IMG/VR virus record: IMGVR_UViG_3300023175_000005
Coordinates: 186,001-250,000 of that record
DNA: 64,000 nucleotides
Direction: 5' to 3' (one strand)
This document shows, in pieces, positions 31,379-50,889 of this stretch. The notes under the pieces are model-generated. The model worked only from the letters and a program-made list of their open reading frames with translations. It made no database searches and was not told the origin of the DNA. The position numbers were made by a program, and so were the translations under genes. Each line of letters begins with the position of its first letter. Position 1 is the first letter of the stretch.

Positions 31379-31807
31379 TTATGCATTTGATTCCCTTTCG
31401 CATACTCGTTTTCTTAAATCGCTGCTTGAGAAGCGGTGATCTCTTTTGTTGAAATGTAGCTGGATACCCCGCTTCTTGCAAATATCCTTGCCAGTAAAAT
31501 CCTTTTCACGATACTCTTCACCTAGTATTCTAACATCAATATGATACATTGTCAAGATATCTTCTAGGTCCTGTTCAGTTGCATAAGGAATTATTTCATC
31601 TACATAACTCACTCCTTTGAGTTGTGTATAACGTTCCACTATAGTTTGTACAGGTGGATTCTTCTCTGGCCTATCTACACTGGGATCCATTTGCAATCCG
31701 CATATAAGATAGTCACATTGTTCTTTTGCTTCACGTAGCATTTGTACATGTCCTGCATGTAACAAATCAAATGTTGAACAAGTAAATCCTACTTTCATTC
31801 GTACCAA
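31379..31807 (-). CDS. Glycerol-3-phosphate cytidylyltransferase-like (TagD family)
   Basis: STFDLLHAGH (HxGH), ER...L, RDHRFSSS. Confidence 0.85.
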   Translation of the reverse strand: MVRMKVGFTCSTFDLLHAGHVQMLREAKEQCDYLICGLQMDPSVDRPEKNPPVQTIVERYTQLKGVSYVDEIIPYATEQDLEDILTMYHIDVRILGEEYREKDFTGKDICKKRGIQLHFNKRDHRFSSSDLRKRVCERESNA

Positions 31808-37241: not shown

Positions 37242-38307
37242 TACAAGTACCTCTGAATTTATCTAAATGTTTTTGGTAACTCATGCCTTGTTCAAAGTGT
37301 TTTATATTACGTTCTCGAGTAACTGCCGGTAAGCTTCTTTTAAGATCTTTATACACATCGCATAAGTCTATATAAATTTGTTTATGATCATCAGGTGCAT
37401 GACACGGTGCAAATTCTTTAGGACTGTTCACAGGATAAACTTCCCATCTTTCAAAATTATTTGACATAATCCATTCACCTAGTGATTCCATATGTTTTAC
37501 GTTAATCCAACTTACAGTTGTACAGACATCACTTGTACCAATTTGTTGTGCTTTTGCAATGTTTTTTATAATTTTATCCCAATTGCTAGGATACCTAATA
37601 TATTCATTTATTTCTTTATAACCGTCAATGCTAAAATGCCACTCCACATCAAATTTTTCTAAAATTGAAAGTAGTTTAGTGGGTAAATTGTTTCCGTTTG
37701 TAGTTATACGTAAACTAGGTTTGCTATCATATACTAAAAGATATTCGCAAAACTTTTGAAGGTAATTGTTTACAGTTGGTTCTCCACCTGTGAAACGTAT
37801 TTCATCTCTATCGTGTAAAAATTCAGCAAGTTTTTGTAAATTGTTTTCGTCTTCATACCATACATCAAACGAATACTTGTGTCTTTGTATTAGTTTATGT
37901 TGTATACCTTGGCTATCTAGTTTTGTAAGTTCTGCATCTATAAGACTGCTGTTCACAGGACCGCACATTGAACACGAAAGATTACATTTGTTTCCAAATT
38001 TTATTTCAGCGTCTTTACGATTGTTTCTATACTTTCTTTCGCTTTGCAATCGTAAACTTTCAAAGCCGTAAGATTCTTCTTCTTTACAATCTCTACATCC
38101 TTCGGGAAATATTCCATTATCAAGATCTTTCTTAACACTTGCTAAAAAGTCACTGTCTTTGTATTTTTCAATATCTGAAACTTTTACAAGATCTTTTCTG
38201 TCGCGGTCGTCCCAATTACAGCAAGGGCGTAAATTACCCAAAGTATCCATGCTGATGTGATTATCTAGCCATTTACACTTCTTCGGAGAGTTCGAAGAGT
38301 TTGTCAA
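37225..38307 (-). CDS. Radical SAM/twitch protein (TTG start inferred)
   Basis: CKW...RPCC...CRDC; CNLSCSMC; TGGEP; TTNG; SIDG. Confidence 0.85.
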   Translation of the reverse strand: MTNSSNSPKKCKWLDNHISMDTLGNLRPCCNWDDRDRKDLVKVSDIEKYKDSDFLASVKKDLDNGIFPEGCRDCKEEESYGFESLRLQSERKYRNNRKDAEIKFGNKCNLSCSMCGPVNSSLIDAELTKLDSQGIQHKLIQRHKYSFDVWYEDENNLQKLAEFLHDRDEIRFTGGEPTVNNYLQKFCEYLLVYDSKPSLRITTNGNNLPTKLLSILEKFDVEWHFSIDGYKEINEYIRYPSNWDKIIKNIAKAQQIGTSDVCTTVSWINVKHMESLGEWIMSNNFERWEVYPVNSPKEFAPCHAPDDHKQIYIDLCDVYKDLKRSLPAVTRERNIKHFEQGMSYQKHLDKFRGTCIDMVF

Positions 38308-39394
38308 TTTCTCTGACTTTTCCACAGGATTTTCCGCACTGGACCCAGCATTGACTGATTGATTTTGATTGCCAACTGTCTGAATAAACTGCAAGTACGC
38401 CTCCGTCTATAATTTGATCAAGTCTATGATGATGTAAATTGTTAGCATCACCTAGTGCTTTTTGTAGTGTTTGCATTTCTCTTGCTTCAGGAACATATCT
38501 AGGACCTTGCATTTTATTTCCTATAAAGCAACAAGGATGAACTCTTCCCAATGCATCTATATATAGTTCAACCATTGGTTCTTCATGGTATGGATATGGC
38601 AAAGTTCTAAAACTATTACAGGCAATAACGCCTTCTTCTTTAACAGGTTCTGGCAAATCTGCTTCCCAACCTAATGGAGCAGGTGTATAATGGTCATGTC
38701 CGTAATCAGTAGCATGTTCTAACACATATTCTAAGTTATAGTCTTTGTCGTATGCAGGCATACCTGTTCCATCTACACCAAATGGATTTTTTAACACAAA
38801 ATTGATACCATTTTCTTCTGCAATTTTTCTACTGAGTTCAACTTGATGTTTGTTGTGTTTAAATTGTAAAAAGTCCCAATCAGTATGCGCACCTGTATAT
38901 GCATAGGCAATCATGTTATTCCATGCTTTATCCCAAATAACATTTCTTCTGTATATATGGTTAGTATCTTCTAAGCCGTCTATACTAAATGTAATTTTAC
39001 GCATTGGTTTTGGATCTAAACCATTTGTTGTTTCTATAAACAGTTCTCCTATTGCACGGAAATGATCCGGAGTACGCAAACCACCATTTGTGTTAATTTG
39101 TATAGTTGCTATACTGTTAGAGCATATATAATCTAATATATCATATATGTCATTACAGGCCAATGGATCTCCATGTGTTCCGCAAAATATCCAACTTTTA
39201 GATTTTTGTACAAGATCTAGTGGAAACCATCTTTTAAACAAATCAATTGTAATATCAGTCTGCACAACTTCCGGATCGACATTAGTGCTATTACGTAAGA
39301 ATCTTGGACAGCCTGGACACGCTGCGTTACAACGTGTACTTAATTCTACGTGGAAAGCATTTAAATCGTTATAATTCCATGCATTATACTTCAT
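38273..39394 (-). CDS. Radical SAM/SPASM protein
   Basis: CNAACPGC; CGTHGDP; TNG; SIDG; HPCC...CWVQC; TAAATAC-TAT-ATG start. Confidence 0.85.
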   Translation of the reverse strand: MKYNAWNYNDLNAFHVELSTRCNAACPGCPRFLRNSTNVDPEVVQTDITIDLFKRWFPLDLVQKSKSWIFCGTHGDPLACNDIYDILDYICSNSIATIQINTNGGLRTPDHFRAIGELFIETTNGLDPKPMRKITFSIDGLEDTNHIYRRNVIWDKAWNNMIAYAYTGAHTDWDFLQFKHNKHQVELSRKIAEENGINFVLKNPFGVDGTGMPAYDKDYNLEYVLEHATDYGHDHYTPAPLGWEADLPEPVKEEGVIACNSFRTLPYPYHEEPMVELYIDALGRVHPCCFIGNKMQGPRYVPEAREMQTLQKALGDANNLHHHRLDQIIDGGVLAVYSDSWQSKSISQCWVQCGKSCGKVREIDKLFELSEEV

Positions 39395-39855: not shown

Positions 39856-40367
39856 TCACCCACAACTTCGTTATAATAACCTTGGTCCCAATTCACGTAA
39901 TAGTTTTGTTTACGTAAAGACTTTCGTGCAAGTTCAAGTTTATCTTTTTGCTGCAAGAAACTTACAGCGTATTTACCGTTATTAAGAACTGTATTTTGTA
40001 CCTGTTCTTTTTCATTTGGATGATCTTCTAAAGCAATAAATCCTCTATTGTGTAGGAATTGGTCGTTTGCATGACCAACTGCACGTGATAGTTCTTCTGA
40101 TGAAATTAAAGTAGGGTCACAACCTAATATAACAACTTCTGTATTTTTAGGCCAATGATAAGAAAAATTTTCAAGTTCTGCTATAAAATAAGAACTCATA
40201 CTTATATTATAAATATCTTTTAATTCTACACACTTAATCTTGTCTTCTAGCATTGCTTGTTTAGCAAACGGACAAGGAGGAAGGTTATTAAATGTTTTAG
40301 AAGGTATGCTGAGAAAAGTTTCTATCCAGTTTTGTATATGTTGTTCAAACATAACATTACTTTGCAC
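39852..40367 (-). CDS. DUF1415-like protein
   Basis: WIETF...PCPFAK; EDHP; FLQ. Confidence 0.45.
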   Translation of the reverse strand: MQSNVMFEQHIQNWIETFLSIPSKTFNNLPPCPFAKQAMLEDKIKCVELKDIYNISMSSYFIAELENFSYHWPKNTEVVILGCDPTLISSEELSRAVGHANDQFLHNRGFIALEDHPNEKEQVQNTVLNNGKYAVSFLQQKDKLELARKSLRKQNYYVNWDQGYYNEVVGE

Positions 40368-40542
40368 CTTTAGTCATTGACTTTTTGCGGATAGTGGCAT
40401 AGTAAACATTTTCCCAATCTTTACCATACTGTTTTTTCATATTCTTTTTCATATCACCGTCGTCATACTTTTTCTTAAGTTTTGTTTCCTTAGACTTTTC
40501 AGCCCCGGTCATTTTACGTTCAGTGAATTCGTGAATACGCAT
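40357..40542 (-). CDS. Small basic probable internal head protein
   Basis: MRIHEFTE CTS-like N-terminus; Lys-rich. Confidence 0.5.
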   Translation of the reverse strand: MRIHEFTERKMTGAEKSKETKLKKKYDDGDMKKNMKKQYGKDWENVYYATIRKKSMTKGAK

Positions 40543-40544
40543 TA

Positions 40545-41441
40545 TTAATCACATTTACATGAGCCTGGTTCACCGCGTGGTACGCCTGCTACTTTACGAC
40601 AACCTTTCCAGCATTTATCATAAATTTTACTGTTGCCGTGACGCTTACCTTCTGGCAGATTTGCTAGTTCTTTTTTCTCTTGAGCAGTAAGCATTGTCTT
40701 GCCACATTCGTTACAAGTTTGTTCTTTCATTTTTTCAGCAAGCGTTGTTTTATAATCAGCTTTTGCTGCTTCGTCCATATTGCCTTTGAATGTTTTCTTT
40801 GACTCTCCCATCATATCATAATCTAGTGTATGATATACTGAGCCCATATAGTCTGCTGCTTTTGTGATTTTGCTTTGCATCCAACCTTCGATGCCCTCTG
40901 CCTCTGAAACACCTTTTAGCATTTCGTGTAGTTTAATTGCATACTTTGCAATTTTATAAAGTTCTGCACGAGCCATTTGTACTTCGTGATCACGTTCTGC
41001 AACACCTGCCATATCAGCCAAACCTTCTGTAACTGCATTGCAATTACAGTGTTTGCATGTTGGAGGACATGTGCAGTCTTCTGCTTTTACGTCTGAACCG
41101 CAGCATTTATCTGAACAATGTGTATCTTTTGCTTCAATCATGCCTTCGCTAGTACCACCTTTAGCAAGAGCAACTAATTCTTTAAAACGATCTACAGTAA
41201 ACTCACCTTGATCACGCATTGTTGTATATTCACTCATCGCATCTAGCAACTCTCTTGCGGTTGATACTTGCTGATTAGCAATTAGTGATCCCATATGATC
41301 TAATTGATTAAAATCAACATCATTCATAGGTGCGTTCTTGACGTTTTGAATACGTCTGCGAATCATTGGAAGCAGTGTCTTTGTCATTTGAGCGAACTGC
41401 ATCTGTGCTTTGTTTTTTGCTGCTTTATTCATTGTAGGCAT
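40545..41441 (-). CDS. Probable internal head polyprotein with Cys-rich modules
   Basis: Late promoter 41469-41474; repeated xxE/(A,G,S) junctions; HCSDKCC..CTCPPTCKHCNC. Confidence 0.5.
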   Translation of the reverse strand: MPTMNKAAKNKAQMQFAQMTKTLLPMIRRRIQNVKNAPMNDVDFNQLDHMGSLIANQQVSTARELLDAMSEYTTMRDQGEFTVDRFKELVALAKGGTSEGMIEAKDTHCSDKCCGSDVKAEDCTCPPTCKHCNCNAVTEGLADMAGVAERDHEVQMARAELYKIAKYAIKLHEMLKGVSEAEGIEGWMQSKITKAADYMGSVYHTLDYDMMGESKKTFKGNMDEAAKADYKTTLAEKMKEQTCNECGKTMLTAQEKKELANLPEGKRHGNSKIYDKCWKGCRKVAGVPRGEPGSCKCD

Positions 41442-41471
41442 CGGTGGCTCCGTTTTCTCTTGTTGTAGTAT

Positions 41472-41654
41472 TTATCGTTTCAGCAGTGATCCGCCAAATA
41501 ATGATACACCTTTCATATCCAATGCATTATCAGTTGGCTTTTGTTTTTTAGGTTTTCTTTTAGATTTTGCAACAGTTGGATTTACCACTGTTGATACACT
41601 TGATGTTCCCATTCCTGTTGCAACTTCATTTACTATAACATCTTTTATCTTCAT
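41472..41654 (-). CDS. Small basic probable internal head protein
   Basis: MKIKDVIVNE. Confidence 0.5.
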   Translation of the reverse strand: MKIKDVIVNEVATGMGTSSVSTVVNPTVAKSKRKPKKQKPTDNALDMKGVSLFGGSLLKR

Positions 41655-41656
41655 TG

Positions 41657-41926
41657 TCAAGTCCCTCCTACTAACTTTCCTCTTAAAGGATGTTTTGTTG
41701 TAGGACCTTTACCCGGCTTTGATTTCTTAGGCATTGGATCTTTGCCTTTAGCATGATCAGCATGTTTATATTCTTCATATGCCTTGCCTTTATGCTTTTC
41801 TTTCCGAGGTAGTACTTTCTTTTTATCTTTGTGAGCACCTGCTGCACCACTTTTGCGAATATCCTGCATAGTTTTACTGCTAGGATCTCTCTGTTTCACT
41901 GCTTCTAAAATATCTTGCATCTTCAT
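41657..41926 (-). CDS. Small basic probable internal head protein
   Basis: MKMQDILEA; KQ...GAGAHKDKK. Confidence 0.5.
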   Translation of the reverse strand: MKMQDILEAVKQRDPSSKTMQDIRKSGAAGAHKDKKKVLPRKEKHKGKAYEEYKHADHAKGKDPMPKKSKPGKGPTTKHPLRGKLVGGT

Positions 41927-42111
41927 TTGGCTCTCCTGAGGTCTGTAATGCCTGCGTTTTTACCGTATTGAGCATAAATGATGTTACGTGCTTCTCTGTT
42001 ATTTCTTGCGCTAACTTGGACAGGTATCCATTGTGTGTATGTACGCTGGCGCACTCGGACATTTGCTATCCAAACAGAAAATTGACTCTTTTTGACTTCT
42101 CTTATTAGCAT
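41923..42111 (-). CDS. Small basic protein, probable leaderless late gene
   Basis: MLIREV; TAAATAC-ATT-ATG. Confidence 0.55.
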   Translation of the reverse strand: MLIREVKKSQFSVWIANVRVRQRTYTQWIPVQVSARNNREARNIIYAQYGKNAGITDLRRAK

Positions 42112-42118
42112 AATGTAT

Positions 42119-42952
42119 TTATCTTAAACCTTTTAAGTTCTTCACAGTTCTTTCAAACTTGTGATCTTTGTGTTTAAAGCCGATGCCGCCTGCTTCAGAC
42201 CATTTGTTAATGTTAACACCATAATCGTCGATTAGAATATTTGCAGAACCGTCTGAGTTCGTAGCATACTGTGCTTTGTCGTGTGTTAAAAATATTCTTC
42301 TAGGTGGAAAAAATGACAAATTTTTCTTGATCCATTCCTTTTTATGTGGAATACTTTTAGGATCATCAGCAAGCGGACTGCTTAATATATTATAACTGCC
42401 TTTGACACGCTTGATTAACATTAACAAAGGCTTTGCATTTTTTGTAAGAGGTAAATTTAACCAAAAATCATCTACTGTTTTAATTTTATTAATTGCATTA
42501 GCAGGATCTTCGATATCAGTCCAGTGTTTTTTGTTCATTAATTTAGCCCAATCGCCAAAAAAGTCAGCAAGTACACCGTCCATGTCTACGTAAATTTCAG
42601 TATTAGGACCTATATTTTCTAGTTCTTCTACTAGTTCATTGTTATATGCAAGCCATGCGATTTCACTTCCGTGTCCTTTTGGCCATGAATGTTCTTCCGG
42701 TAGGCTATGCCCGCCCTCCATCAGTGCAAGTTCATATGCACTATAGGTTTTTTCTGCTAGTCCTAAATTAAAAAGTACGTTAGTAGATTTACCTTTTACT
42801 TTAGTTGATAGTGTAGGTGGACGTCCGTTTTTATCTACAGTATTACCAAATTTTGCTGCTTGCTTTGGTATTTCGTCTACGTCTACATCAGGAGTAGTGT
42901 TAACTCCTTTTACAATACGTCCATCTTCTTTTAAAAATTCAAATAGTTTCAT
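42119..42952 (-). CDS. HAD 5'(3')-deoxyribonucleotidase (NT5C-like) fused to a CTS-like leader
   Basis: MKLFEFLKE; YVDMDGVLADF; K..WI; LIDD. Confidence 0.75.
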   Translation of the reverse strand: MKLFEFLKEDGRIVKGVNTTPDVDVDEIPKQAAKFGNTVDKNGRPPTLSTKVKGKSTNVLFNLGLAEKTYSAYELALMEGGHSLPEEHSWPKGHGSEIAWLAYNNELVEELENIGPNTEIYVDMDGVLADFFGDWAKLMNKKHWTDIEDPANAINKIKTVDDFWLNLPLTKNAKPLLMLIKRVKGSYNILSSPLADDPKSIPHKKEWIKKNLSFFPPRRIFLTHDKAQYATNSDGSANILIDDYGVNINKWSEAGGIGFKHKDHKFERTVKNLKGLR

Positions 42953-43059
42953 TCACAATTACACTTCGTACATACATCGTTTACACAGTCTTTACAATCG
43001 GGTTGATAGCAATGGCATTTATGCCCACAACTTTTGCAAGTTCTTCTTTCGCCCTTCAT
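42949..43059 (-). CDS. Unannotated 36-aa Cys-rich peptide (9 Cys, 2 His)
   Basis: MKGERRTCKSCGHKCHCYQPDCKDCVNDVCTKCNCE; ATGA overlaps at both ends. Confidence 0.7.
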   Translation of the reverse strand: MKGERRTCKSCGHKCHCYQPDCKDCVNDVCTKCNCE

Positions 43060-43268
43060 TTCTTTCTCCCTCTAAATTGCACGGGACCTGTCATATAAGG
43101 TTTTGAAAACCATAGTTTAAACCAATCTTCGTCTCCTGGCTTAAGACCCATTTCGCGTTCTTTCTTTTTTAGAGCAGCCGCAGTTTTATCTGGACTTTCT
43201 ATTTTATATTCTGTATAGCCTTGGAATTCATTAATTCCTGCCAGCTTCTTTAGATCTTCTATGTTCAT
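43056..43268 (-). CDS. Small probable internal head protein
   Basis: MNIEDLKKLAGINE. Confidence 0.55.
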   Translation of the reverse strand: MNIEDLKKLAGINEFQGYTEYKIESPDKTAAALKKKEREMGLKPGDEDWFKLWFSKPYMTGPVQFRGRKK

Positions 43269-43461
43269 CCCAGTATTTGTTTCTTTCGTTTGTGCTTGTT
43301 CTGTTTTCTTCGTGTTGTTTATATTTGGCTATATAGTGTGCCCATTCTATGTCATCGATACTCATATCTTCGTGTTCTCTCCACGTTTTGCTATACCCAT
43401 CTGGGTATTCTTCTGCCCAGTCTATTTTTTCTTTTTGCCCGACTTCATGTTTGCGCACCAA
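43231..43461 (-). CDS. Hypothetical protein
   Basis: 76 aa, overlaps neighbours. Confidence 0.45.
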   Translation of the reverse strand: MVRKHEVGQKEKIDWAEEYPDGYSKTWREHEDMSIDDIEWAHYIAKYKQHEENRTSTNERNKYWDEHRRSKEAGRN

Positions 43462-45506
43462 TGATACATCCTCGCTTTTTCACCACTACTATTTTTAGCC
43501 CTCTTGCGTAGTGCTGTAACACTACCATTACAACTAGCACCTGAACGCTTTACACGCCCTGGTCTGCTTTTGCCTTTTACTTTACCATCAGCAAAGTTTT
43601 CATTCATTCCAAGTTGATCAACCATTATTTCTAACGCTGAATCTACATCATTTAAACCATTTTCTTCTTTTGTTTTCTCATACCAACTTCTTACAAAGTT
43701 TGATGCTGCGTGTCCATAAGTATCTGGCGCCATCATCATTTGATAAAGAACTTGATCAGGTGCTTCTCGTTGAGACCTAACAAATTTTCTAAGACTATCT
43801 AAGTCTGTACTTTCATTATATGCTATATTTGTTGCTGCTTTTGCTTTTGCACCGTGTGGATGTTTAGGATTTATACCCACAGGTTCGCCATTTATAAGTT
43901 GTGAAATATCTACACTCTTGCCTAGTCTATCTAGCAGTTGATGTAATTTGTCAGTGGGATCGTAATTACCGCTTTCATAACCACTTTTACCACGCACTTC
44001 GGTACGTTTACCTGTAGCAGTATCTACAATGTGTAGTATCATTAGATCGCCGTCACGTTCTAATGTTAGTTTGTAACCTTCAGTAATTTTTTTTTTGGGT
44101 TTTGTCTTTTTTGGCTTTTCGTCTGAACTATGACCAAAATACTTGTGAACTAATTTGTCTAGTTTTCTATGGAATTCATCTTCTTCATCCGGAGAAGCAT
44201 CTTCAGATATGTCAATTGATTCGTCGGCCATCTTTTTAACAAGTTCGTCACCTTTTTTCGTAAAGAATTTTTGTAGGGCAACACCTCCTAAGATCAATAT
44301 TACTGCCATCATAATACTAAACTTGTTTGCAACAAGGAATTTAACCATTTCAGCACCAAGTATACTTTCAACCCAGTCCCATCCTTTTTTAGCATAATAT
44401 GCCGCTGTGCCGCCTATTGCTATTTTGCCGCCATGCCGTCTAATTGCCCATTTGACTACAGGAACTGCGCCTCTCCTTGCAGCCCATCCTAAAACCCAAC
44501 CTGCTGCTTTTGCACCTGCCCATAATACTGCTGGTGCAATTTCATTAACTTGTTGTTCATTGACATTATCTGCCATTCTGATACTGTGTTTTATGCCAAT
44601 ATTGTTAAAAAGTTTACTTGCATTTTGCACACTTGTTAGTGCTCTTTTCATTCTATCTTGATATTTAGGATTGTTATCAAACTTTGAAATAAATTTCTTT
44701 GCTTCATCAGGTTTAACATATATAAGTTTGCCACTCCATGCAGCACCTTTCCTATAAAAACTTAAAAAATGTTCTTTACCGTCTGCGCGATCTGCAATCC
44801 AACTTAGTACTTTAATTTTATTAGGATCTTGGCTTTTTATACTTGTATTATCGTTACCTAAACCAAATAATTCTTTAACACTTTCTTCTGCTGGTGCTTC
44901 AGTATCTCCTAATGCTTGATTAAGTAGTTTTACAGCAACAGGAGCACCATTACCGTACATAAGTTTTGCGGCTTTTAATTTATCTTCGTCTGACATTTCA
45001 GGCCATGTTGCTCTAAGTTCACTAGCACTCTTAATTTGTATACCTGAAAAACCAAAATCTATAGTAGGACCATAGGCCATATAGCCCATTTCATCACTAG
45101 TTCTAAGATTTTTTCCTTTGTATGACCTTAAATAACCAGGCTCACCATTCTTCTTTGTTTGATCTGGCAACGGTTGTTCGCCTTTGTCTTTTAGACTTCG
45201 TACAAATACTATTGCTGCATCGTCTCCTAACATGTCTTTATAACTGTTTAAGTTAAAAGGTGACTTGACTTGTATAAAACGCTCTGCAGGAACTCCTGCC
45301 ATACTAGCAAGTTTCTTTTTTACATCGAAAGGAAATGGTCTAGTTTTAGTGTCTGCTGTTGCAGCAACATATACATTTTCACTGCCAAATGTTTTTGTTG
45401 CCCAATCATATAAACTTTTGTGACCAGGATGAAAAGGATGAAATCCTCCAGGCATAATTGCAACAATTCGTCTTGCCTGTGCTTCAAATAGGTCACGGAC
45501 GAACAT
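43422..45506 (-). CDS. Modular probable internal head polyprotein with N-terminal HIGH-type nucleotidyltransferase domain
   Basis: MFVRDLFEA start (TAATG); PGGFHPFHPGH and SASELR; several xNE/xTE junctions. Confidence 0.6.
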   Translation of the reverse strand: MFVRDLFEAQARRIVAIMPGGFHPFHPGHKSLYDWATKTFGSENVYVAATADTKTRPFPFDVKKKLASMAGVPAERFIQVKSPFNLNSYKDMLGDDAAIVFVRSLKDKGEQPLPDQTKKNGEPGYLRSYKGKNLRTSDEMGYMAYGPTIDFGFSGIQIKSASELRATWPEMSDEDKLKAAKLMYGNGAPVAVKLLNQALGDTEAPAEESVKELFGLGNDNTSIKSQDPNKIKVLSWIADRADGKEHFLSFYRKGAAWSGKLIYVKPDEAKKFISKFDNNPKYQDRMKRALTSVQNASKLFNNIGIKHSIRMADNVNEQQVNEIAPAVLWAGAKAAGWVLGWAARRGAVPVVKWAIRRHGGKIAIGGTAAYYAKKGWDWVESILGAEMVKFLVANKFSIMMAVILILGGVALQKFFTKKGDELVKKMADESIDISEDASPDEEDEFHRKLDKLVHKYFGHSSDEKPKKTKPKKKITEGYKLTLERDGDLMILHIVDTATGKRTEVRGKSGYESGNYDPTDKLHQLLDRLGKSVDISQLINGEPVGINPKHPHGAKAKAATNIAYNESTDLDSLRKFVRSQREAPDQVLYQMMMAPDTYGHAASNFVRSWYEKTKEENGLNDVDSALEIMVDQLGMNENFADGKVKGKSRPGRVKRSGASCNGSVTALRKRAKNSSGEKARMYHWCANMKSGKKKK

Positions 45507-45859
45507 TAGTACTCTCCGTTGCGGAAGTTTTCTATTTCGCCTCTTAGTATTTGATCGATTACCATCATCTTTTCTTCTCTTGTACACATCTCTTCGGGCA
45601 TTTTTTTGATTTTAAATTTATTAACATATTCTTTTATAGCACATTCGACAGTAGGAAGTAAAGACTTTTTATCGTATCTTTTGCCTTTTTTTACAACTTC
45701 TTGTACATCACACATTTTTGGATATAACTGGCGTCTATAAAATTCAGGATCATTCTTCATATACACCACTAAATCGTCAACAACGTTAAACGGAAGTTTA
45801 TCTCCCGTTTTTGTATCCATGTCTTGGCTAAGATCGTGAAACTCGTTGATTTTTACCAT
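45506..45859 (-). CDS. Hypothetical protein
   Basis: MVKINEFH; coupled at both ends. Confidence 0.6.
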   Translation of the reverse strand: MVKINEFHDLSQDMDTKTGDKLPFNVVDDLVVYMKNDPEFYRRQLYPKMCDVQEVVKKGKRYDKKSLLPTVECAIKEYVNKFKIKKMPEEMCTREEKMMVIDQILRGEIENFRNGEY

Positions 45860-46611
45860 TTGCGGCAACTCCAGTAACGTGCTTTTGTTCTTGGTCCTGG
45901 ATTATCACAGTTATGTCTAGCACGGAATGAACGTCTACGTGCTGGGTTAGACTTTTTGATCTTCATGTTTGGATCACCAAAGTTAACTTTCTTAATATTT
46001 TTAGTCTTTGGATCTCTTACATATACTTTGAACTTTTTAACATCGCCGCGCATAGGTTTGCCAAGTTTAACTTTGCGTCCTTGATATTCAGCTTCGTCCA
46101 TTGATTTTCTATCACGTCTTAATTCTAAATATTTTGTTCCACTAGTTGCTACCATACCCATTGCTTTTGCATCGTTTTGTGCTTGCATTTTATTTGTTAT
46201 TGGATAGCTTTTTTTAACTTCTAGTGTTCCTGGATCATAGACAATATACATATTTCTATATTTTTCAAACTCTGATCTTTCTTCTAAACCTTCATCTTCA
46301 TCTTCGTTGAACCACATGACACCGTAGTTTTCAAAAAACTCGTCGCCGTCATATGTTTCTTCAATATCTGAAATTTCTTCGTTAGCAGATATTTCAATAT
46401 CAAAGTCGTCATAACCTTGTTCAAACATATAATTTGCTAGGTGCTCTGCATATCCATCTGCTTCTTCTTCTGATAATTCCCTAGATAGAGGAATTTCAAA
46501 AACTGTTGCACCCTGTTCTGATTCAAAAATGTCGTTGCCTGGAAAAATTGACTCATCTAACTTTTCAGCAATATCAGTTTTTTCCATGACTACTCGGATA
46601 AAATGTTCCAT
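45853..46611 (-). CDS. Probable late/head protein, acidic N-half and basic C-terminal module
   Basis: Late promoter 46640-46645; MDEAEYQGRKV...RYWSCRKW. Confidence 0.55.
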   Translation of the reverse strand: MEHFIRVVMEKTDIAEKLDESIFPGNDIFESEQGATVFEIPLSRELSEEEADGYAEHLANYMFEQGYDDFDIEISANEEISDIEETYDGDEFFENYGVMWFNEDEDEGLEERSEFEKYRNMYIVYDPGTLEVKKSYPITNKMQAQNDAKAMGMVATSGTKYLELRRDRKSMDEAEYQGRKVKLGKPMRGDVKKFKVYVRDPKTKNIKKVNFGDPNMKIKKSNPARRRSFRARHNCDNPGPRTKARYWSCRKW

Positions 46612-46638: not shown

Positions 46639-47337
46639 CTATTTATCTAGATCGTGTTTGTAAATTAGTTTATCGATCCTTGAAATATTACCACCTGCAA
46701 GTAGTTCAAACAATGTAAGTGCTTTGTCGTTCTTAATATAAACGTATTGCCCTTTTATCCAGTTTTTGTTTTTTATTTTTTGTAACAGTTTAGTGCCGCA
46801 TTTGCATAAATTAGGATTTTTTACAATCCAATTAGCCATTTCAGGATTAACATTCTTGCCACCAAATGTAACTTTATAATCAAACTCTGTTTCTTTGTTA
46901 ACAATAATTACATTTTTATTATTTTGCAAATATTCTATCATATCAGGACTCGGCTTCCAAACTTTAATGTAGTCTGCTGATAAAGTATTGGCTAATTTGT
47001 CTATCAAACTCTCGTTGTTTGAATAAATGTTTAAGAAACTTTGCTCTATTCTAACAGTATAGTCTGTTTCATGCATTAGATTGGTAATGATTCTTTCGAC
47101 ATCTAATATCTCATTAGTATCAATAGAAATATGTGAGTGACCAAATCTTGCGTTTACTTGAAATGTTTTACTTCCAGGAAAAATTCTTGCTTTAAATGAA
47201 TTAAGTTCTCGTCTTGCGTACTGAAAGTTTTTCCCGTGCTGTATTTCAGTACGCAATATATGTGCTATATAAAGTCTTGTTTCTAATTTATATAGATATT
47301 TGTTATAATGTAGTTTTGTAGTCTCAGCTTGTTGCAA
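46639..47337 (-). CDS. Hypothetical protein
   Basis: 232 aa, coupled to clpA. Confidence 0.6.
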   Translation of the reverse strand: MQQAETTKLHYNKYLYKLETRLYIAHILRTEIQHGKNFQYARRELNSFKARIFPGSKTFQVNARFGHSHISIDTNEILDVERIITNLMHETDYTVRIEQSFLNIYSNNESLIDKLANTLSADYIKVWKPSPDMIEYLQNNKNVIIVNKETEFDYKVTFGGKNVNPEMANWIVKNPNLCKCGTKLLQKIKNKNWIKGQYVYIKNDKALTLFELLAGGNISRIDKLIYKHDLDK

Positions 47338-49573
47338 TTACAGTACTCTCAACATTTAAGACGATGTCTTTGCCTTTTGCGTTGATTGATAGTTTACCAC
47401 CGTCTTTCAAATCACCAAACAATAGCATTCTTGACAAAGGACGTTTAATATCTTTGTCAATAACACGCTGTAATGGTCTTGCACCCATTTTACGATCAAA
47501 GCCTTTGTCTACTAACAAATCTAATGCTTCGTCTGTAACAGAAACTTCTACGTTTTTATCCGCAACTTGATCTTTAAGTTCTTTTAAGAACTTGCCAACA
47601 ATTTTTAACATCACAGGCTTACCAAGTTTAGCAAACGTAATAACGCCATCTAGCCTATTTCTAAACTCTGGTGCAAAGAATTTTTTCAATTCGCCATCTT
47701 CGTAGTCAGAACCGTCTGATTCTTCACCAAATCCGATAGCATTTTTCTCTGCTTCTCTTGCACCAAGATTTGTTGTTAGGATTAGGATACTGTTACGTGC
47801 ATCTGCTTCCTTACCGTTGCTGCCAGTGATCATACCGTTGTCCATAAGTTGCAATAAAACATTACTTACATCTGGGTGTGCTTTTTCAATTTCATCTAGC
47901 AACAACACACAGTTGGGATTTTCTTGCAGTTTGATAATCAACTGTCCTGCATCGTCTTCAAATCCTACATAACCTGGAGGTGCACCGATAAACTTTGCAA
48001 CACTATGCTTCTCTTGATATTCACTCATATCAAATCGTACAAGTTGTACACCTAAATGATGTGCAAGTTGTTTTGCTGTTTCTGTTTTACCTGTACCTGT
48101 CGGACCCATAAACACAAATGATCCAATCGGTTTATCTTCTGGTTTAAGTCCTGCTTGCGAAACAAGTATTTTATCAACAATACCTTCGATTGCTTCGTCT
48201 TGACCGTAAACACTACCTTTCATATTAGTTTCTAAATTAGCAAGATTTTCTGTCTCACGTTCTGCAACTTGCTCTTTTGGTATTTTAACCATTTTTGCAA
48301 GTTCAAATTGAATACTTTCTTCTGTGACAATTTTATTTTCTGTCTGATTATTGACCTTGAACCTACTACATGCAACATCAATAACATCAATTGCTTTGTC
48401 AGGTAGTTTTTTATCTGCTTGATATTTGATTGTAAGTTTTACTGCTGCTTCAATTGCTTCATCTGTAATTTCTACAGTATGAAATTCTTCATAATATTTC
48501 TTAATACCATGTAAAATATCTTTTGTAATTTCTGCACTCGGCTCGTCAACAGTTACACGCTGGAATCTTCTCATAAGCGCACGATCTGATTCGAAGTACT
48601 TGCGGTACTCTTCCCAAGTAGTTGAAGCAACAACTTTGATATTACCTTTAGACAATGCAGGTTTTAACATATTTGCTAAATCATTTGCACTATTACTTCC
48701 ACCTGCGCCAGCGCCACTAATCATGTGTGCTTCGTCAATAAACATAATAGTTTTGCCTTTTTTCTGTAGTGCAGATAACACAAGTTTAAAGCGTTCTTCA
48801 AAGTCGCCGCGGTATTTTGAACCTGCAAGCATACTGCCGATATCAAGTGCATAAACATTGTATTCTTTTAAAAACTCTGGAACATCGTTGTTTACAATTT
48901 TCCATGCTAAACCTTCAGCAATAGCAGTTTTACCCACACCTGGATCGCCGACCATAAGCACATTTGATTTTGTGCGGCGTCCTAGTGCAAGTGCTAGTGA
49001 TTCTATTTCGTCTTCCCGTCCGATAACAGGATCTATACGACCTTTTTTAACATCGGCATTGAGATCGTCAGTAAATGCTTTTAATGCTTTGTTAGCAATA
49101 CCAGCATTTTCCATGTCTTCGTCTGCTACTATATCTAATTCAAGTTCTGCACTCATATATTGGATAAACTTATCTTTCTGAATGCCTGCTTGTTGACATG
49201 CAAAGAACGCATAACTTCTTTTTTCGCTTAATGTACTAATAAAAACATCAGTAATTTCGATTTGATTGCGTCCTTGAAATAATACTTGTGCAAAAGCTCG
49301 ATTTAAAACCCGCTCAACAGTGCCTGTCTTAACAGGTTTATATTTTTTTGCTTCTGTTTTAATTTCGTTTAATTTTGTTTTGAGATAATTTTCTACATTC
49401 TTTTTCAATAGGTCTACATCTGTATCAAACCCTTTTAATGCTGTAGAAAATTGTTCTTCACACAGCATTGCAAACAGAAGATGTTCAAGAGTAACATATT
49501 CATGCTGTAATTTCTTTGCGTCTTTAACTGCCTTATCAAATACTACTTGTAATGCTTGGCTAGGTTCTACCAT
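47324..49573 (-). CDS. clpA: ATP-dependent Clp protease ATP-binding subunit
   Basis: N-domain EHLL; GDPGVGKT; FIDEAH; GPTGTGKT; LLLDEIEKAH; IGF ClpP-docking loop; GARPL. Confidence 0.93.
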   Translation of the reverse strand: MVEPSQALQVVFDKAVKDAKKLQHEYVTLEHLLFAMLCEEQFSTALKGFDTDVDLLKKNVENYLKTKLNEIKTEAKKYKPVKTGTVERVLNRAFAQVLFQGRNQIEITDVFISTLSEKRSYAFFACQQAGIQKDKFIQYMSAELELDIVADEDMENAGIANKALKAFTDDLNADVKKGRIDPVIGREDEIESLALALGRRTKSNVLMVGDPGVGKTAIAEGLAWKIVNNDVPEFLKEYNVYALDIGSMLAGSKYRGDFEERFKLVLSALQKKGKTIMFIDEAHMISGAGAGGSNSANDLANMLKPALSKGNIKVVASTTWEEYRKYFESDRALMRRFQRVTVDEPSAEITKDILHGIKKYYEEFHTVEITDEAIEAAVKLTIKYQADKKLPDKAIDVIDVACSRFKVNNQTENKIVTEESIQFELAKMVKIPKEQVAERETENLANLETNMKGSVYGQDEAIEGIVDKILVSQAGLKPEDKPIGSFVFMGPTGTGKTETAKQLAHHLGVQLVRFDMSEYQEKHSVAKFIGAPPGYVGFEDDAGQLIIKLQENPNCVLLLDEIEKAHPDVSNVLLQLMDNGMITGSNGKEADARNSILILTTNLGAREAEKNAIGFGEESDGSDYEDGELKKFFAPEFRNRLDGVITFAKLGKPVMLKIVGKFLKELKDQVADKNVEVSVTDEALDLLVDKGFDRKMGARPLQRVIDKDIKRPLSRMLLFGDLKDGGKLSINAKGKDIVLNVESTVIATS

Positions 49574-50084
49574 TTTTGTTCCTTTTTGCTTGCTTTTTTA
49601 AACCCATGTTAAGTTTTAGTCTGCTAACTCTATTAATGAATTGTATTCCTTGTAAGTGATCATATTCGTGTAAAAATATTCTACTGTCAATATCATTAAA
49701 TTTTGTCTCTACATGTATAACATCTTTATAGTCATTTGTCAACGTATCAAATTCAACAACACAACTAATTGGACGTCTTACTTTAAGTGTCAACCCCGGA
49801 TGGCTTAAACACCCTTCAATTCCTTCTTCTAATTCTTTACTAATACCTTTAATGTGCGGATTTATTACAACGATTGTATCGCCGTATTTTTTATTTAACA
49901 AACATTTCATAACAAATATCTGCCCATTTATTCCCACTTGATTTGCTGATAATCCTAACCCTCCTTCCTTTTGCATTAATTCAATCATTTCAAATGCAAG
50001 AGGTCTTGGATTGTCTGTAGCCAAATCAAACTTTGGAACAGGATTTTCTAGTCTTGTATCAGGCGCTACGATTAATTGCATCAT
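49560..50084 (-). CDS. def: Peptide deformylase
   Basis: [21 protein letters not shown]. Confidence 0.93.
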
Positions 50085-50889
50085 TTATTAATTTTACCTT
50101 TTCTAGCATATTAGGATCTTTTATTTTTGGTGTAATACCTTTCAACTTTACATATAAATTTCCTGTACGTCCTGTATTAAGTTCTGGCAAACCTTTTCCA
50201 GATATACTTAATATAGTACCTGGGTTTGTTCCTGCAGGGATATTCAATCTAACCATGCCTCCTTCTAGAGTTGGAATGTTTTTAGTTGTACCTGCTATAA
50301 ATTCCAATAAATTGACCTTTTCTTCAATATGTAAGTGTGCATTATCCCTTCTAAACCTAGGATGTTTAACAATGGCTATTTGCATAATCAAGTCACCTCT
50401 AGGTAAACTATGTGCAGAGTGATCTCCTAATCCTCTGTATCTCATTAATTGACCATCCATTACACCAGGAGCAATTCTAATACTTGCACTTGTTTCTACA
50501 CCATTCAACATATTATAAGTTGCAAGAAAATCTTTACCTCGTAAAACATCTTCTAGTGTGAGACTTACCCGCAACCTAATATCTTTGTTTCTGACTGCAC
50601 GATGTTGTTGTGCAAAACCTTGTCCAAACATACTGCCAAAAATATCATTAAAATTACCGAAGTTATCAGTAAACGCATTACCTTGAAAATTATTATTAGT
50701 TGCAGGATTGTCATACAACGATCTTTTTTCAGGATCTTTTAACGTATCATATGCTTCGTTAATTTGAGCGAACTTTTTGCCATCACCACCCTTGTCAGGA
50801 TGGTGTTGCATTGCAAGTTTTCTATATGCTTTCTTTAATTCGTCTGACGTGGCGTCTTTGTTTACACCCAGTACGCTGTAATAGTCCAT
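50059..50889 (-). CDS. DnaJ-class II/CbpA-like chaperone (no Zn finger)
   Basis: J-domain with HPD, G/F-rich linker, DnaJ C-terminal domains. Confidence 0.9.

What the first reader, a model, noticed from the sequence alone, without database searches (positions are those of the whole stretch)
43422..45506. 694-aa cargo polyprotein combining a HIGH-motif nucleotidyltransferase, a Trp/Gly-rich membrane-active module and basic modules
Seen: PGGFHPFHPGH and SASELR (HIGH and KMSKS-like) in the N-terminal part; AVLWAGAKAAGWVLGWAARRG...MMAVILILGGVAL amphipathic/TM segment; basic C-terminal ENFADGK...HWCANMK module. Inference: an injected NMNAT/cytidylyltransferase-like enzyme could counter NAD-depleting defences, and the amphipathic module may act in ejection.
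Basis: inference. Interest (0 to 1): 0.6.

Follow-up and report, generated by a model that had tools for sequence, protein, structure and literature searches.

The report
Protease-cut cargo polyprotein of jumbo phage
This 694-residue phage gene strings six swappable protein modules (an NMNAT/PPAT-like nucleotidyltransferase, a membrane-type segment, three unknown modules and a very basic tail) between short motifs matching the cutting sites of the phage's own T4-type head protease, so it is probably loaded into the capsid and cut into separate pieces like T4's internal proteins, though no protein data show this yet.

Summary
The ORF lies on the minus strand (45506 to 43422, 694 aa) and every quoted motif is present.

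The genome is a roughly 350-kb jumbo myovirus from salt-marsh metagenomes. It has a T4-type capsid protein, scaffold and prohead protease.

The protein is a mosaic:
- an 8-aa leader (MFVRDLFE)
- module A, a HIGH/ISST nucleotidyltransferase (fold ties PPAT, NadD and NadM at Z about 11)
- module B, a swappable cassette
- module C, Trp/Gly/Ala-rich with one predicted TM helix
- modules D and E, with no known fold
- module F, a 58-aa tail of pI 11.2

The protein has only eight hydrophobic-x-Glu sites. All eight lie at module borders and none of the 25 Glu inside modules has one. In relatives the same motif precedes modules D and F whatever sequence lies upstream.

Hundreds of relatives share the leader, which resembles the T4 capsid-targeting sequence. 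The smallest relatives are leader plus F only.

The phage's scaffold is its most site-enriched ORF. T4 run through the same script gives the same picture.

A 92%-identical relative has B replaced and a ParB_N module inserted exactly at these junctions.

Best reading: a capsid-targeted, protease-processed cargo polyprotein. Packaging, cleavage and the enzyme's substrate are inferred. The NAD-counter-defence idea has no specific support.

The parts
43422..45506 (-). Whole ORF, 694 aa plus stop: leader, modules A-B-C, linker, modules D-E-F
   Evidence: the identical protein P0002 is on 12-13 contigs
45514..45517 (-). GGAG ribosome-binding site 7 nt before the ATG. The ATG overlaps the stop of upstream ORF 45506-45868 (TAATG).
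45483..45506 (-). Leader, aa 1-8 (MFVRDLFE). It is a capsid-targeting-sequence-like propeptide ending in L-F-E before Ala.
   Evidence: Strict leader in 159 of 266 retrieved relatives, whatever module follows. 189 of 2685 first-Met ORFs against 18 of 6571 internal Mets in 79 related loci. T4 CTS is MKTYQEFIAE.
44871..45482 (-). Module A, aa 9-212: HIGH/ISST nucleotidyltransferase of the cytidylyltransferase-like fold. It ends in a disordered linker with V-K-E212.
   Evidence: Pfam PF01467 at 19.7-20.7 bits against a cut-off of 21. Model pLDDT 89.8. PPAT Z 11.2, NadD Z 10.9, NadM Z 10.8. Best PDB profile hit is NadM 2qjt, E 7e-4. Invariant G20 H23 H26 G28 H29 S160 R165.
44556..44870 (-). Module B, aa 213-317: variable cassette of unknown fold, ending V-N-E317
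   Evidence: In a 92%-identical syntenic relative, window 44559-44892 is replaced by unrelated sequence. Found in 54 'AB' relatives. No Pfam or Atlas lead.
44541..44555 (-). Pentapeptide QQVNE, aa 318-322, lying between two V-N-E sites
   Evidence: distant relatives have L-D-E directly before IAPAV
44202..44540 (-). Module C, aa 323-435: Trp/Gly/Ala-rich amphipathic stretch followed by one predicted TM helix (about aa 396-414), ending I-S-E435
   Evidence: Present at 41% identity at the C-terminus of 29 'AC' relatives. No standalone homologues and no fold lead.
44079..44201 (-). Charged linker, aa 436-476, ending I-T-E476
43812..44078 (-). Module D, aa 477-565 (starts GYKLTLER): conserved strand-plus-helix domain with no known fold, ending Y-N-E565
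   Evidence: Preceded by hydrophobic-x-E in 31 of 34 distinct contexts and by Glu in 34 of 34. Model pLDDT about 80-86. No PDB match at Z 5 or more.
43599..43811 (-). Module E, aa 566-636: acidic helical module (pI 4.5), ending M-N-E636
43425..43598 (-). Module F, aa 637-694: 58-aa very basic C-terminal module (pI 11.2), always the last module and one copy per locus. Proposed counterpart of the T4 internal proteins.
   Evidence: At least 755 clusters of 65-116-aa proteins carry it, and many are leader plus F only. The E/F junction is disordered in the model. The relative's ParB_N module is inserted exactly at codon 635.
42119..42952 (-). Neighbouring gene of the same system: leader MKLFEFLKE, a 'GRIVKGVNTT...NLGLAE' module, then an NT5C 5'-deoxynucleotidase
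41657..41926 (-). 89-aa basic protein with leader MKMQDILE (second-best leader score in the genome)
41472..41654 (-). About 60-aa protein with leader MKIKDVIVNE. It belongs to a class seen in many related loci.
40357..40542 (-). 61-aa basic protein with leader MRIHEFTE (third-best leader score in the genome)

Best explanation
The gene encodes a precursor polyprotein of a T4-type internal-protein system in an uncultured jumbo myovirus.

Shown directly:
- The protein is a mosaic of six independently shuffling modules behind an 8-residue leader.
- Module A is a HIGH/ISST nucleotidyltransferase.
- Its only hydrophobic-x-Glu motifs sit at the module borders.
- The same motif precedes the same modules in relatives with unrelated upstream sequence.
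- The genome encodes a T4-type prohead protease, and its scaffold is packed with such motifs.
- Close relatives differ by in-frame replacement or insertion of whole modules at these borders.

Inferred:
- The leader acts like the T4 capsid-targeting sequence and brings the precursor into the prohead core.
- The prohead protease then cuts after Glu 8, 212, 317/322, 435, 476, 565 and 636.
- Cutting would release a 22-kDa nucleotidyltransferase, a 12-kDa variable module, a 12-kDa membrane-type module, two small conserved modules and a 6-kDa DNA-binding-type basic peptide (F).
- F would be the lineage's counterpart of the basic T4 internal proteins.
- The pieces would stay with the packed DNA and enter the host with it.

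Each genome keeps one F gene. Cargo modules are inserted between leader and F by in-frame recombination, or by fusion of neighbouring leader-bearing genes. The cut sites make fused and separate gene forms equivalent.

The substrate of module A is not resolved. It could be NMN/NaMN, 4'-phosphopantetheine or something else.
For: 1. Genome type. gp23-type capsid protein (E 8e-103) and Peptidase_S77 prohead protease (E 1e-26) are present. The capsid protein is 65-70% identical to those of 350-470-kb jumbo myoviruses.

2. Mosaic. Modules A to F occur in other orders and combinations in thousands of metagenomic proteins. At least 537 IMG/VR loci carry D or F.

3. Leader.
- Consensus M-[KR]-hydrophobic-x-[DE]-[IL]-x-E in 159 of 266 relatives, whatever follows it.
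- 189 of 2685 first-Met ORFs against 18 of 6571 internal Mets carry it in 79 loci, with 1-6 such genes (mostly 2-3) in each of 76 loci; all listed examples lie on the same strand as the F gene.
- In the own genome the three best of 2243 Met positions all lie in this locus.
- Minimal proteins are leader plus F (MRAHEFVNE|NFADGK...). Compare the T4 CTS MKTYQEFIAE on highly basic internal proteins (PMC9026906).

4. Cut sites.
- Only 8 hydrophobic-x-E sites in 694 aa, all at module borders. None of 25 Glu inside modules has one (P about 3e-4; 4 of 20000 shuffles).
- The genome-wide observed/expected ratio is 1.15.
- Module D is preceded by the motif in 31 of 34 contexts. Module F is preceded by the motif in 92 of 110 small F-bearing proteins, with Glu immediately before NF in every context listed. 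Module C is preceded by it in distant relatives.
- The A/B and E/F junctions are disordered in the models.

5. Protease specificity. The ORF in the scaffold position is the most motif-enriched in the genome: 31 of 49 Glu against 13.8 expected, P 3e-7. The capsid-protein propeptide has LLE, LLE and LSE sites.

6. T4 positive control with the same scripts. gp21 and gp22 are the top two enriched ORFs. IPI, IPII and IPIII have sites only in their propeptides. Alt has ITE near its N-terminus and LTE near residue 620, matching published processing at ITE-6 and LTE-619 (PMC5694885).

7. Leader-bearing module-A homologues carry 0.56 sites against 2.31 expected. Leaderless ones carry 1.59 against 2.57.

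8. Cassette exchange at the junctions in a 92%-identical relative.

9. In the cultured relative Vibrio phage 2.275.O, the 80-aa gene between portal and prohead protease (the T4 gp67/68 position) starts MKLVELFE|A.

10. Cargo repertoire in relatives: NT5C, GNAT, sigma-70 region 4, CCA/poly(A) polymerase, SLT, ParB_N, Cu/Zn SOD.
Against: - There are no protein-level data. Nothing shows that the protein is in virions or is cut.
- The gene lies 140 kb from the head module, among chaperone and nucleotide-metabolism genes. T4's ip and alt genes also lie outside the head cluster.
- The T4 late-promoter motif is not enriched in the window: 3 found against 9 expected.
- The TM helix in module C could send the precursor to the membrane instead of the prohead.
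- The D/E site (YNE565) lies inside a predicted helix.
- The leader is 8-9 residues, not 10, and is only similar to the T4 CTS.
- T4 Alt keeps about eight internal motif copies, so absence of internal sites is typical of the T4 internal proteins but not obligatory.
- Module borders were partly recognised by the sites themselves, although homology break-points place them independently.
- Cultured phages lack modules D to F, so no virion proteome can be consulted.
- The Peptidase_S77 gene was found in only 2 of 5 other large contigs, all of them fragments.
Confidence: 0.58

Rival explanations
1. A cytoplasmic or membrane-anchored multidomain auxiliary enzyme that is never packaged or cut. Module A would work in nucleotide or cofactor metabolism while tethered to the membrane by module C and to DNA by the basic tail. 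The leader would be a conserved translation-start or regulatory feature, and the hydrophobic-x-Glu motifs would be a habit of linkers.
For: Neighbours are ClpA-like, DnaJ, peptide deformylase, NT5C and radical SAM genes, not structural genes. There is one predicted TM helix. Leaderless homologues of module A exist. No late-promoter motif is enriched.
Against: This reading does not explain several observations. All 8 motifs sit at borders and none at the 25 internal Glu. Position -3 stays hydrophobic before modules D and F while the upstream sequence is unrelated. The leader is confined to one gene class: the top three of 2243 Met positions in the genome lie in this locus, and the motif is 26-fold enriched at first Mets. 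The smallest family members are leader plus a 58-aa basic peptide.
Confidence: 0.2
2. The protein is packaged and cut, but it is a head-assembly component and not injected cargo. The pieces would act as core, scaffold or DNA-condensing proteins like T4 gp67, gp68 and gp22. They would be expelled or stay in the capsid with no role in the host.
For: In the cultured relative, a leader-bearing 80-aa gene sits between portal and protease in the gp67/68 position. Module F is a small basic peptide suited to binding packed DNA. There is one F gene per locus.
Against: The cargo modules in relatives are enzymes with no obvious assembly role: nucleotidyltransferases, NT5C, GNAT, CCA-adding enzyme, SLT, ParB_N and SOD. 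They are swapped between near-identical genomes. That pattern fits host-directed proteins better than essential assembly parts. T4 internal proteins and Alt are ejected (PMC9026906).
Confidence: 0.17
3. An injected NMN/NaMN adenylyltransferase that restores NAD to defeat NAD-depleting defences.
For: The best PDB sequence-profile hit is the NMNAT domain of NadM (2qjt, E 7e-4, over aa 10-74 only). NadD and NadM are among the top fold matches.
Against: PPAT ties or beats them (Z 11.2 against 10.9 and 10.8). Identity is 12-17%. No NAMPT gene is present in the 72%-complete genome. From general knowledge, NADases yield nicotinamide and ADP-ribose, from which an NMNAT alone cannot regenerate NAD.
Confidence: 0.12

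Closest known systems
[quoted passage not shown]
   Same: Both have a short N-terminal propeptide ending in hydrophobic-x-Glu (T4 MKTYQEFIAE; here MFVRDLFE, and MRAHEFVNE on the minimal F proteins). Both mature parts are small and highly basic (F has pI 11.2). Neither has protease motifs in the mature part. Both occur in genomes with a gp21-type protease and in variable loci.
   Different: Here the basic protein is at the C-terminus and up to five or more unrelated cargo modules lie between leader and basic module, each bounded by its own cut motif. The leader is 8-9 residues, not 10. There is no detectable sequence similarity to the T4 internal proteins. Packaging has not been shown.
T4 Alt (packaged ADP-ribosyltransferase)
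   Same: Alt is an enzyme carried in the head. A short propeptide is removed from its N-terminus (ITE-6) and about 63 residues from its C-terminus (LTE-619) by gp21 (PMC5694885). This parallels leader removal and release of the 58-aa module F.
   Different: The enzyme fold differs (HIGH nucleotidyltransferase, not ART). Several internal cuts are predicted here. Alt keeps internal motif copies.
Polyvalent proteins of phages and conjugative elements (Iyer et al. 2017, PMC5512222)
   Same: Both combine many disparate domains in one polypeptide, show strong mosaicism, and are predicted to be delivered with the DNA. Relatives here carry ParB_N, SLT, GNAT and Pol-beta NTase domains, which are listed there.
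   Different: That survey has no cytidylyltransferase-like domain. Its hub domains (zincin metallopeptidase, ArdC-N) are absent here. Here the domains are separated by motifs for the head protease, so they are probably released as separate proteins and do not act as one chain.
Ejection proteins of phiKZ and SPN3US giant phages processed by their prohead protease
   Same: Head-internal proteins are cut after Glu at a short motif by a gp21-related protease. Paralogous propeptides are shared between proteins (PMC5694885).
   Different: The motif there is S/A/G-x-E. The phage lineage differs, and no modular cassette polyproteins of this kind are described there.
NadM/NatV-type and NadD-type NMN/NaMN adenylyltransferases; PPAT (CoaD)
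   Same: The Rossmann-like HIGH fold, the GxFxPxHxGH motif and the S..R motif are shared.
   Different: Identity is only 12-17% and TM about 0.5. Module A has an extra His in the motif (GGFHPFHPGH), a family-specific RPFPF motif and an insertion at aa 105-140. Its Pfam score is just under the cut-off. No NAD- or CoA-pathway partner genes were found.

Membership tests
Cytidylyltransferase-like HIGH nucleotidyltransferases (Pfam PF01467 superfamily) | (H/T)xGH motif after the first strand | tested here: met
   GGFHPFHPGH at aa 20-29. G20, H23, H26, G28 and H29 are invariant in 56 homologues.
Cytidylyltransferase-like HIGH nucleotidyltransferases (Pfam PF01467 superfamily) | Second ISSTxxR-type motif | tested here: met
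   KSASELR at aa 159-165. S160 and R165 are invariant.
Cytidylyltransferase-like HIGH nucleotidyltransferases (Pfam PF01467 superfamily) | Rossmann-like fold matching solved members | tested here: met
   Model pLDDT 89.8. PPAT 4nah Z 11.2, NadD 3h05 Z 10.9, NadM 2qjt Z 10.8, with 147-153 residues aligned at rmsd 3.1-3.5. Foldseek gives NadD E 1e-5.
Cytidylyltransferase-like HIGH nucleotidyltransferases (Pfam PF01467 superfamily) | Score over Pfam's gathering threshold | tested here: inconclusive
   19.7-20.7 bits by hmmscan against a cut-off of 21, but 21.4 bits, just over the cut-off, in the genome search. 44 of 84 relatives match at E below 1e-3, with up to 33.5 bits.
NMN/NaMN adenylyltransferase (NadM, NadD, NadR) | Specific similarity above other HIGH transferases | tested here: inconclusive
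   The best sequence-profile hit is NadM, E 7e-4, over aa 10-74 only. By fold, PPAT ties with NadD and NadM within one Z unit.
NMN/NaMN adenylyltransferase (NadM, NadD, NadR) | Pathway partner in the genome (NAMPT) | tested here: not met
   No PF04095 match in the 256-kb record, which is 72% complete, so absence is not proven.
NMN/NaMN adenylyltransferase (NadM, NadD, NadR) | Adenylyl transfer to NMN or NaMN | not testable with these tools
   Needs an enzyme assay.
T4-type CTS-targeted internal head proteins | Short N-terminal propeptide ending in hydrophobic-x-Glu and shared by otherwise unrelated proteins | tested here: met
   The T4 CTS sequence comes from PMC8442874.
T4-type CTS-targeted internal head proteins | gp21-type prohead protease with L/I-x-E specificity in the same genome | tested here: met
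   Peptidase_S77, E 1e-26. Specificity is inferred from the scaffold-position ORF (31 of 49 Glu in the motif, P 3e-7) and the capsid-protein propeptide sites. The same statistic picks gp21 and gp22 in T4.
T4-type CTS-targeted internal head proteins | No protease motif inside the mature parts | tested here: met
   None of 25 internal Glu. T4 IPI, IPII and IPIII show the same pattern.
T4-type CTS-targeted internal head proteins | Presence in virions, removal of the propeptide, ejection into the host | not testable with these tools
   There is no cultured phage carrying modules D to F. The complex prediction of protease with a junction peptide gave no verdict.
Polyvalent proteins (Iyer et al. 2017) | Two or more domains of disparate activity in one chain, with mosaic relatives | tested here: met
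Polyvalent proteins (Iyer et al. 2017) | Hub domains such as zincin metallopeptidase or ArdC-N; a domain set listed in that survey | tested here: not met
   No such Pfam hit in this protein or in 84 relatives. No cytidylyltransferase domain appears in the survey.

The most novel reading that the evidence does not exclude
A large, uncultured group of marine and salt-marsh jumbo T4-like phages builds its injected proteome from a cassette system. Each genome has one leader-to-F 'carrier' gene, plus tandem leader-bearing genes. Any enzyme or binding module can be inserted into these genes in frame between head-protease sites. The injected arsenal could then be read straight from sequence, from the leader and the hydrophobic-x-Glu borders. 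It would evolve by module swapping, as a natural version of the engineered T4 CTS/IPIII-fusion delivery system.
Probability: 0.45. Interest if true: 0.78.

Novelty: new variant of a known kind. Interest (0 to 1): 0.64.

Why it matters
If this is right, the set of proteins a phage carries into the cell could be predicted from sequence for a very abundant but uncultured phage group. More than 3000 representative clusters (50% identity) of related proteins and at least 537 viral contigs are involved. It would also show that T4's capsid-targeting principle is used in nature to deliver multi-module polyproteins that evolve by in-frame cassette exchange. It defines several widespread domains (D, E, F and the leader) that have no annotation. 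It gives concrete cut sites that mass spectrometry can check. It also suggests a natural design for loading foreign proteins into large phage capsids in laboratory phage-host systems.

Tried and rejected
- Pfam and PHROG scans of the whole protein and of each module gave only the weak PF01467 and phrog_395 hits for module A. Modules B to F gave nothing.
- tblastn against 50,697 phage records gave two distant module-A hits and none for D to F, even at E 1.
- No paralogues of any module exist in the own genome.
- The fold search for D-E-F gave nothing at Z 5 or more.
- ESM Atlas searches for modules B and C gave no usable lead.
- A word-index search with module C alone gave no hit among proteins of 62-198 aa.
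- The T4 late-promoter motif TATAAATA is not enriched: 3 found against 9 expected.
- NAMPT was not found in the genome.
- Complex prediction with the prohead protease and the E/F junction peptide gave 'no answer'. This is no evidence either way.
The tool describes this as a filter that also trips by chance.
- An assembly artefact or chimeric ORF was considered and rejected, because the identical protein lies on 12-13 contigs and in 14 DNA runs.
- An aaRS-type KMSKS reading of SASELR was rejected in favour of the ISSTxxR-type motif of this superfamily.
- A ClpA/N-degron reading of the new N-termini was considered and dropped. Only Leu213 among the predicted new N-termini is a classical bacterial N-degron residue. 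This rests on inference from general knowledge.
Full report
OBSERVATION

The ORF is real and lies on the minus strand, from ATG at 45506 to the stop at 43422-43424, giving 694 aa. The plus-strand frame at these coordinates is full of stops. GGAG lies 7 nt before the ATG. The ATG overlaps the stop of the upstream ORF as TAATG, which indicates translational coupling.

The identical protein is recorded on 12-13 contigs. Its DNA is held by 14 salt-marsh metagenome runs, and six metatranscriptome runs hold 35-76% of its sampled words. RNA runs can carry DNA, so expression is likely but not proven.

GENOME

The window is bases 186001-250000 of a 256,558-bp viral contig that CheckV estimates as 72% complete. 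The contig has a T4-type head module:
- portal
- a small conserved gene after the portal
- an acidic protein
- a Peptidase_S77 prohead protease (E 1e-26)
- an ORF in the scaffold position
- a gp23-type capsid protein (E 8e-103)

The capsid protein is 65-70% identical to those of 350-470-kb jumbo myoviruses: Vibrio phage 2.275.O, Sinorhizobium phage Phosso, Serratia phage BF, Yersinia phage fHe-Yen9-04 and the Erwinia pEa_SNUABM phages.

The finding lies about 140 kb from the head module. It sits next to ClpA-like, peptide deformylase, DnaJ, NT5C and radical SAM genes.

MOSAIC ARCHITECTURE

An exhaustive HMMER search found 3047 representative clusters related to the protein. The matches fall on separate stretches of the query: aa 1-210, 207-313, 320-420, 470-566, 566-634 and 634-694. 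I call these modules A to F.

Among 266 retrieved relatives the combinations A, AB, AC, ADF, AF, DF, DEF, DE and EF all occur. Unrelated sequence often lies in between. A is always first and F is always last. There are no paralogues in the own genome. IMG/VR holds at least 537 loci with D or F. Each of 69 loci examined has exactly one F-bearing gene.

MODULE A

The Pfam match to CTP_transf_like falls just under the cut-off by hmmscan, at 19.7-20.7 bits against 21, and just over it, at 21.4 bits, in the genome search. An alignment of 56 homologues shows several invariant features:
- G20, H23, H26, G28 and H29 (GGFHPFHxGH)
- an RPFPF motif
- K63
- S160 and R165 (SAsELR)

The AlphaFold model built on that alignment has pLDDT 89.8. 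Residues 204-209 are disordered. Foldseek ranks NaMN adenylyltransferases first, at E about 1e-5, TM about 0.5 and 12-17% identity. The Foldseek-independent search ties PPAT (Z 11.2), NadD (10.9) and NadM (10.8). The best PDB sequence-profile hit is the NMNAT domain of NadM, at E 7e-4 over aa 10-74 only.

Membership of the HIGH/ISST nucleotidyltransferase superfamily is therefore established. The substrate is not. No NAMPT gene is present in the contig. Two canonical cytidylyltransferase-like genes lie elsewhere in the genome.

MODULES B TO F

None of these modules has a Pfam, PHROG, Atlas or PDB-fold lead.
- C has 6 Trp, 10 Gly and 14 Ala in its first 62 residues, followed by the only strongly hydrophobic segment of the protein.
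- The D-E-F model has pLDDT 77. It shows a small strand-plus-helix domain (D), a helical acidic module (E) and three short helices (F). The E/F junction, aa 636-646, is disordered.
- F has 18 K+R against 2 D+E, pI 11.2.

THE LEADER

Relatives start with M-[KR/FL]-hydrophobic-x-[DE/Q]-[L/I]-x-E, whatever module follows. The modules seen after the leader include module A, two other HIGH-type transferases, a 'GRIVKGVNTT' module, an 'ISHTSKRLHDIE' module, module D and module F. A strict pattern matches 159 of 266 relatives. Most of the rest are mis-called starts, one-residue spacing variants, or a leaderless branch of module A.

In 79 related loci (956 kb), 189 of 2685 first-Met ORFs carry the leader against 18 of 6571 internal Mets. 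Seventy-six of these loci carry 1-6 such genes, mostly 2-3, and all listed examples lie on the same strand as the F gene.

In the own genome a weight-matrix scan of 2243 Met positions puts its three best scores in this locus, at window 45506, 41926 and 40542. The NT5C gene (42952), a 60-aa gene (41654) and one gene beside the head module (genome 96943) also carry the leader.

The smallest family members are leader plus F only, 65-68 aa long. Examples are MRAHEFVNE, MRAQEFINE and MLVSEITE, each directly followed by NFADGK. At least 755 clusters of small F proteins exist, some from Tara Oceans.

The T4 capsid-targeting sequence is MKTYQEFIAE. It sits on three highly basic internal proteins, is removed by the head protease, and suffices to load foreign proteins into the head (PMC8442874; PMC9026906). 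The resemblance covers both the sequence (E-F-[I/V]-x-E) and the type of protein that follows.

CUT SITES

T4 gp21 cuts after Glu in L/I-x-E. For example, Alt is cut at ITE-6 and LTE-619 (PMC5694885).

The finding protein has only eight hydrophobic-x-Glu sites: LFE8, VKE212, VNE317, VNE322, ISE435, ITE476, YNE565 and MNE636. Every one lies at a module border. None of the 25 Glu inside modules has a hydrophobic residue at -2. The expected number is about 7 (P about 3e-4). Only 4 of 20000 within-module shuffles reach zero. The genome-wide observed/expected ratio is 1.15.

The borders are placed independently of the sites by homology break-points and by the DNA comparison described under cassette exchange.

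Across relatives:
- Module D is preceded by the motif in 31 of 34 distinct contexts, and by Glu in all 34.
- Module F is preceded by it in 92 of 110 small F-bearing proteins, and Glu stands immediately before NF in every context listed. The upstream sequences are unrelated.
- Module C is preceded by L-D-E in relatives of 41% identity.
- Leader-bearing module-A homologues carry 0.56 motifs against 2.31 expected. Leaderless ones carry 1.59 against 2.57.

These sequences are related to one another, so the counts are not independent events.

PROTEASE SPECIFICITY AND A POSITIVE CONTROL

The ORF in the scaffold position is the most motif-enriched ORF of the genome: 31 of 49 Glu against 13.8 expected, P 3e-7. 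The capsid-protein propeptide has LLE, LLE and LSE before the conserved core.

I ran the same scripts on T4 itself:
- gp21 and gp22 rank first and second for enrichment.
- IPII and IPIII have motifs only in the CTS.
- IPI has them only at positions 6 and 19, which fits a mature form 19 residues shorter. My recollection is that IPI* has 76 residues.
- Alt has ITE at its N-terminus, LTE near residue 620, and about eight internal copies.

The pattern in the finding therefore matches that of the T4 internal proteins. Alt shows that absence of internal copies is not obligatory.

CASSETTE EXCHANGE

A 236-kb relative is colinear with the window at about 92% DNA identity. Within this ORF there are two exceptions:
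- Window 44559-44892 (aa about 206-316, module B) is replaced by 292 unrelated bases.
- 361 bases encoding a ParB_N-like module are inserted exactly at window 43603/43604, which is codon 635 in the MNE|NF junction.

Other relatives carry NT5C, GNAT, sigma-70 region 4, CCA/poly(A) polymerase, SLT, ParB_N, Pol-beta NTase and Cu/Zn SOD domains in the same framework. In some loci module A, the 'GRIVKGVNTT' module and F are separate adjacent leader-bearing genes. This suggests fusion and fission of neighbouring genes, with the cut motif retained at the joint. That step is inference.

CULTURED RELATIVE

Vibrio phage 2.275.O lacks modules A and D to F. Its 80-aa gene between portal and prohead protease starts MKLVELFE followed by Ala. 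That is the position of the prohead core genes 67 and 68 in T4, a point that rests on my knowledge of the T4 map. The own genome's homologue of this gene starts MILRELYY. The Vibrio phage also has an 861-aa protein starting MKITNIFE.

MECHANISM

Most likely (0.58), the leader brings the precursor into the prohead core. The prohead protease then cuts at the borders and releases these pieces:
- the nucleotidyltransferase (22 kDa)
- B (12 kDa)
- the membrane-type module C (12 kDa)
- a charged linker
- D (10 kDa)
- E (8 kDa)
- the basic peptide F (6 kDa)

The pieces would travel with the DNA into the host.

Architecture, motifs, their statistics, the protease gene and the cassette exchange are shown. 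Targeting, cleavage, ejection and all biochemical activities are inferred.

Rival readings and my estimates:
- an unprocessed cytoplasmic or membrane enzyme (0.20)
- processed head-assembly parts that are not injected (0.17)
- within the cargo reading, the specific NMNAT counter-defence role (0.12)

COMPARISON WITH KNOWN SYSTEMS AND NOVELTY

It works like the T4 CTS/internal-protein system and like Alt. It resembles polyvalent proteins in its mosaicism. That survey has no cytidylyltransferase-like domain, and its hub domains are absent here.

I found no paper describing this family, the leader in jumbo or marine phages, or protease-delimited cargo polyproteins. The held library is incomplete, so this is not proof of novelty. 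I rate the finding a new variant of a known kind.

LIMITS

Those places were not sent to any search tool afterwards.
- The complex prediction gave no verdict.

Noticed in passing
window 40357-43268 (minus strand): A cluster of small genes carries the same N-terminal leader. Members are an 89-aa basic protein (41657-41926), a roughly 60-aa protein (41472-41654), a 61-aa basic protein (40357-40542) and the NT5C gene (42119-42952). The NT5C gene's first 67 residues form a 'GRIVKGVNTT...NLGLAE' module that is also fused to modules D and F in other phages. The 70-aa ORF at 43056-43268 carries a 'WFKLWFS' module seen in relatives. Together they look like a hyperplastic locus of the T4 internal-protein type.
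   Followed up: partly
window 40545-41441 (minus strand): A 298-aa Cys-rich protein is the third most hydrophobic-x-Glu-enriched ORF of the genome (12 of 24 Glu). It contains a 102-nt segment (41028-41129) that is replaced in the 92%-identical relative. It may be another processed head protein.
   Followed up: no
window 47324-50889 (minus strand): This is a phage-encoded proteostasis cluster. It holds a ClpA/ClpB-like double AAA+ protein of 749 aa (phrog_4871, E 2e-246), a peptide deformylase and a DnaJ. It is conserved in synteny in the 236-kb relative.
   Followed up: partly
window 45853-46611 (minus strand): A 252-aa acidic protein has a basic C-terminal domain (phrog_7595) ending in a Cys/Trp motif (...ARYWSCRKW). 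In related loci the same ending closes leader-bearing proteins, including one with a GRFHPFH-type transferase.
   Followed up: no
genome 86583-87671 (minus strand, outside the window): A 362-aa ORF lies between the prohead protease and the capsid protein. 31 of its 49 Glu sit in hydrophobic-x-Glu motifs (P 3e-7). This is the signature expected of a scaffold that the protease degrades. The same statistic singles out gp21 and gp22 in T4.
   Followed up: yes
genome 96425-96943 (minus strand, outside the window): A 172-aa basic protein with leader MKVFEIISE lies near the tape-measure-like and portal genes. It has no PHROG match.
   Followed up: partly
window 31379-31807 and genome 32082-32372: Two canonical cytidylyltransferase-like genes (PF01467, 56 and 54 bits) are present in addition to module A. 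Their roles were not examined.
   Followed up: no
window 37225-39394 (minus strand): Two adjacent or overlapping ORFs match radical SAM families weakly. Several further ORFs elsewhere in the genome start with radical-SAM-like Cys motifs.
   Followed up: no
L102:10836-13421 (Vibrio phage 2.275.O, record 219836-222421, minus strand): An 861-aa low-complexity charged protein starts with the leader MKITNIFE and has no PHROG match. It is a candidate packaged protein in a cultured phage and could be tested by virion mass spectrometry.
   Followed up: partly
They lie inside ORF 46639-47337, which has no annotation. Nothing was sent from there afterwards.
   Followed up: no
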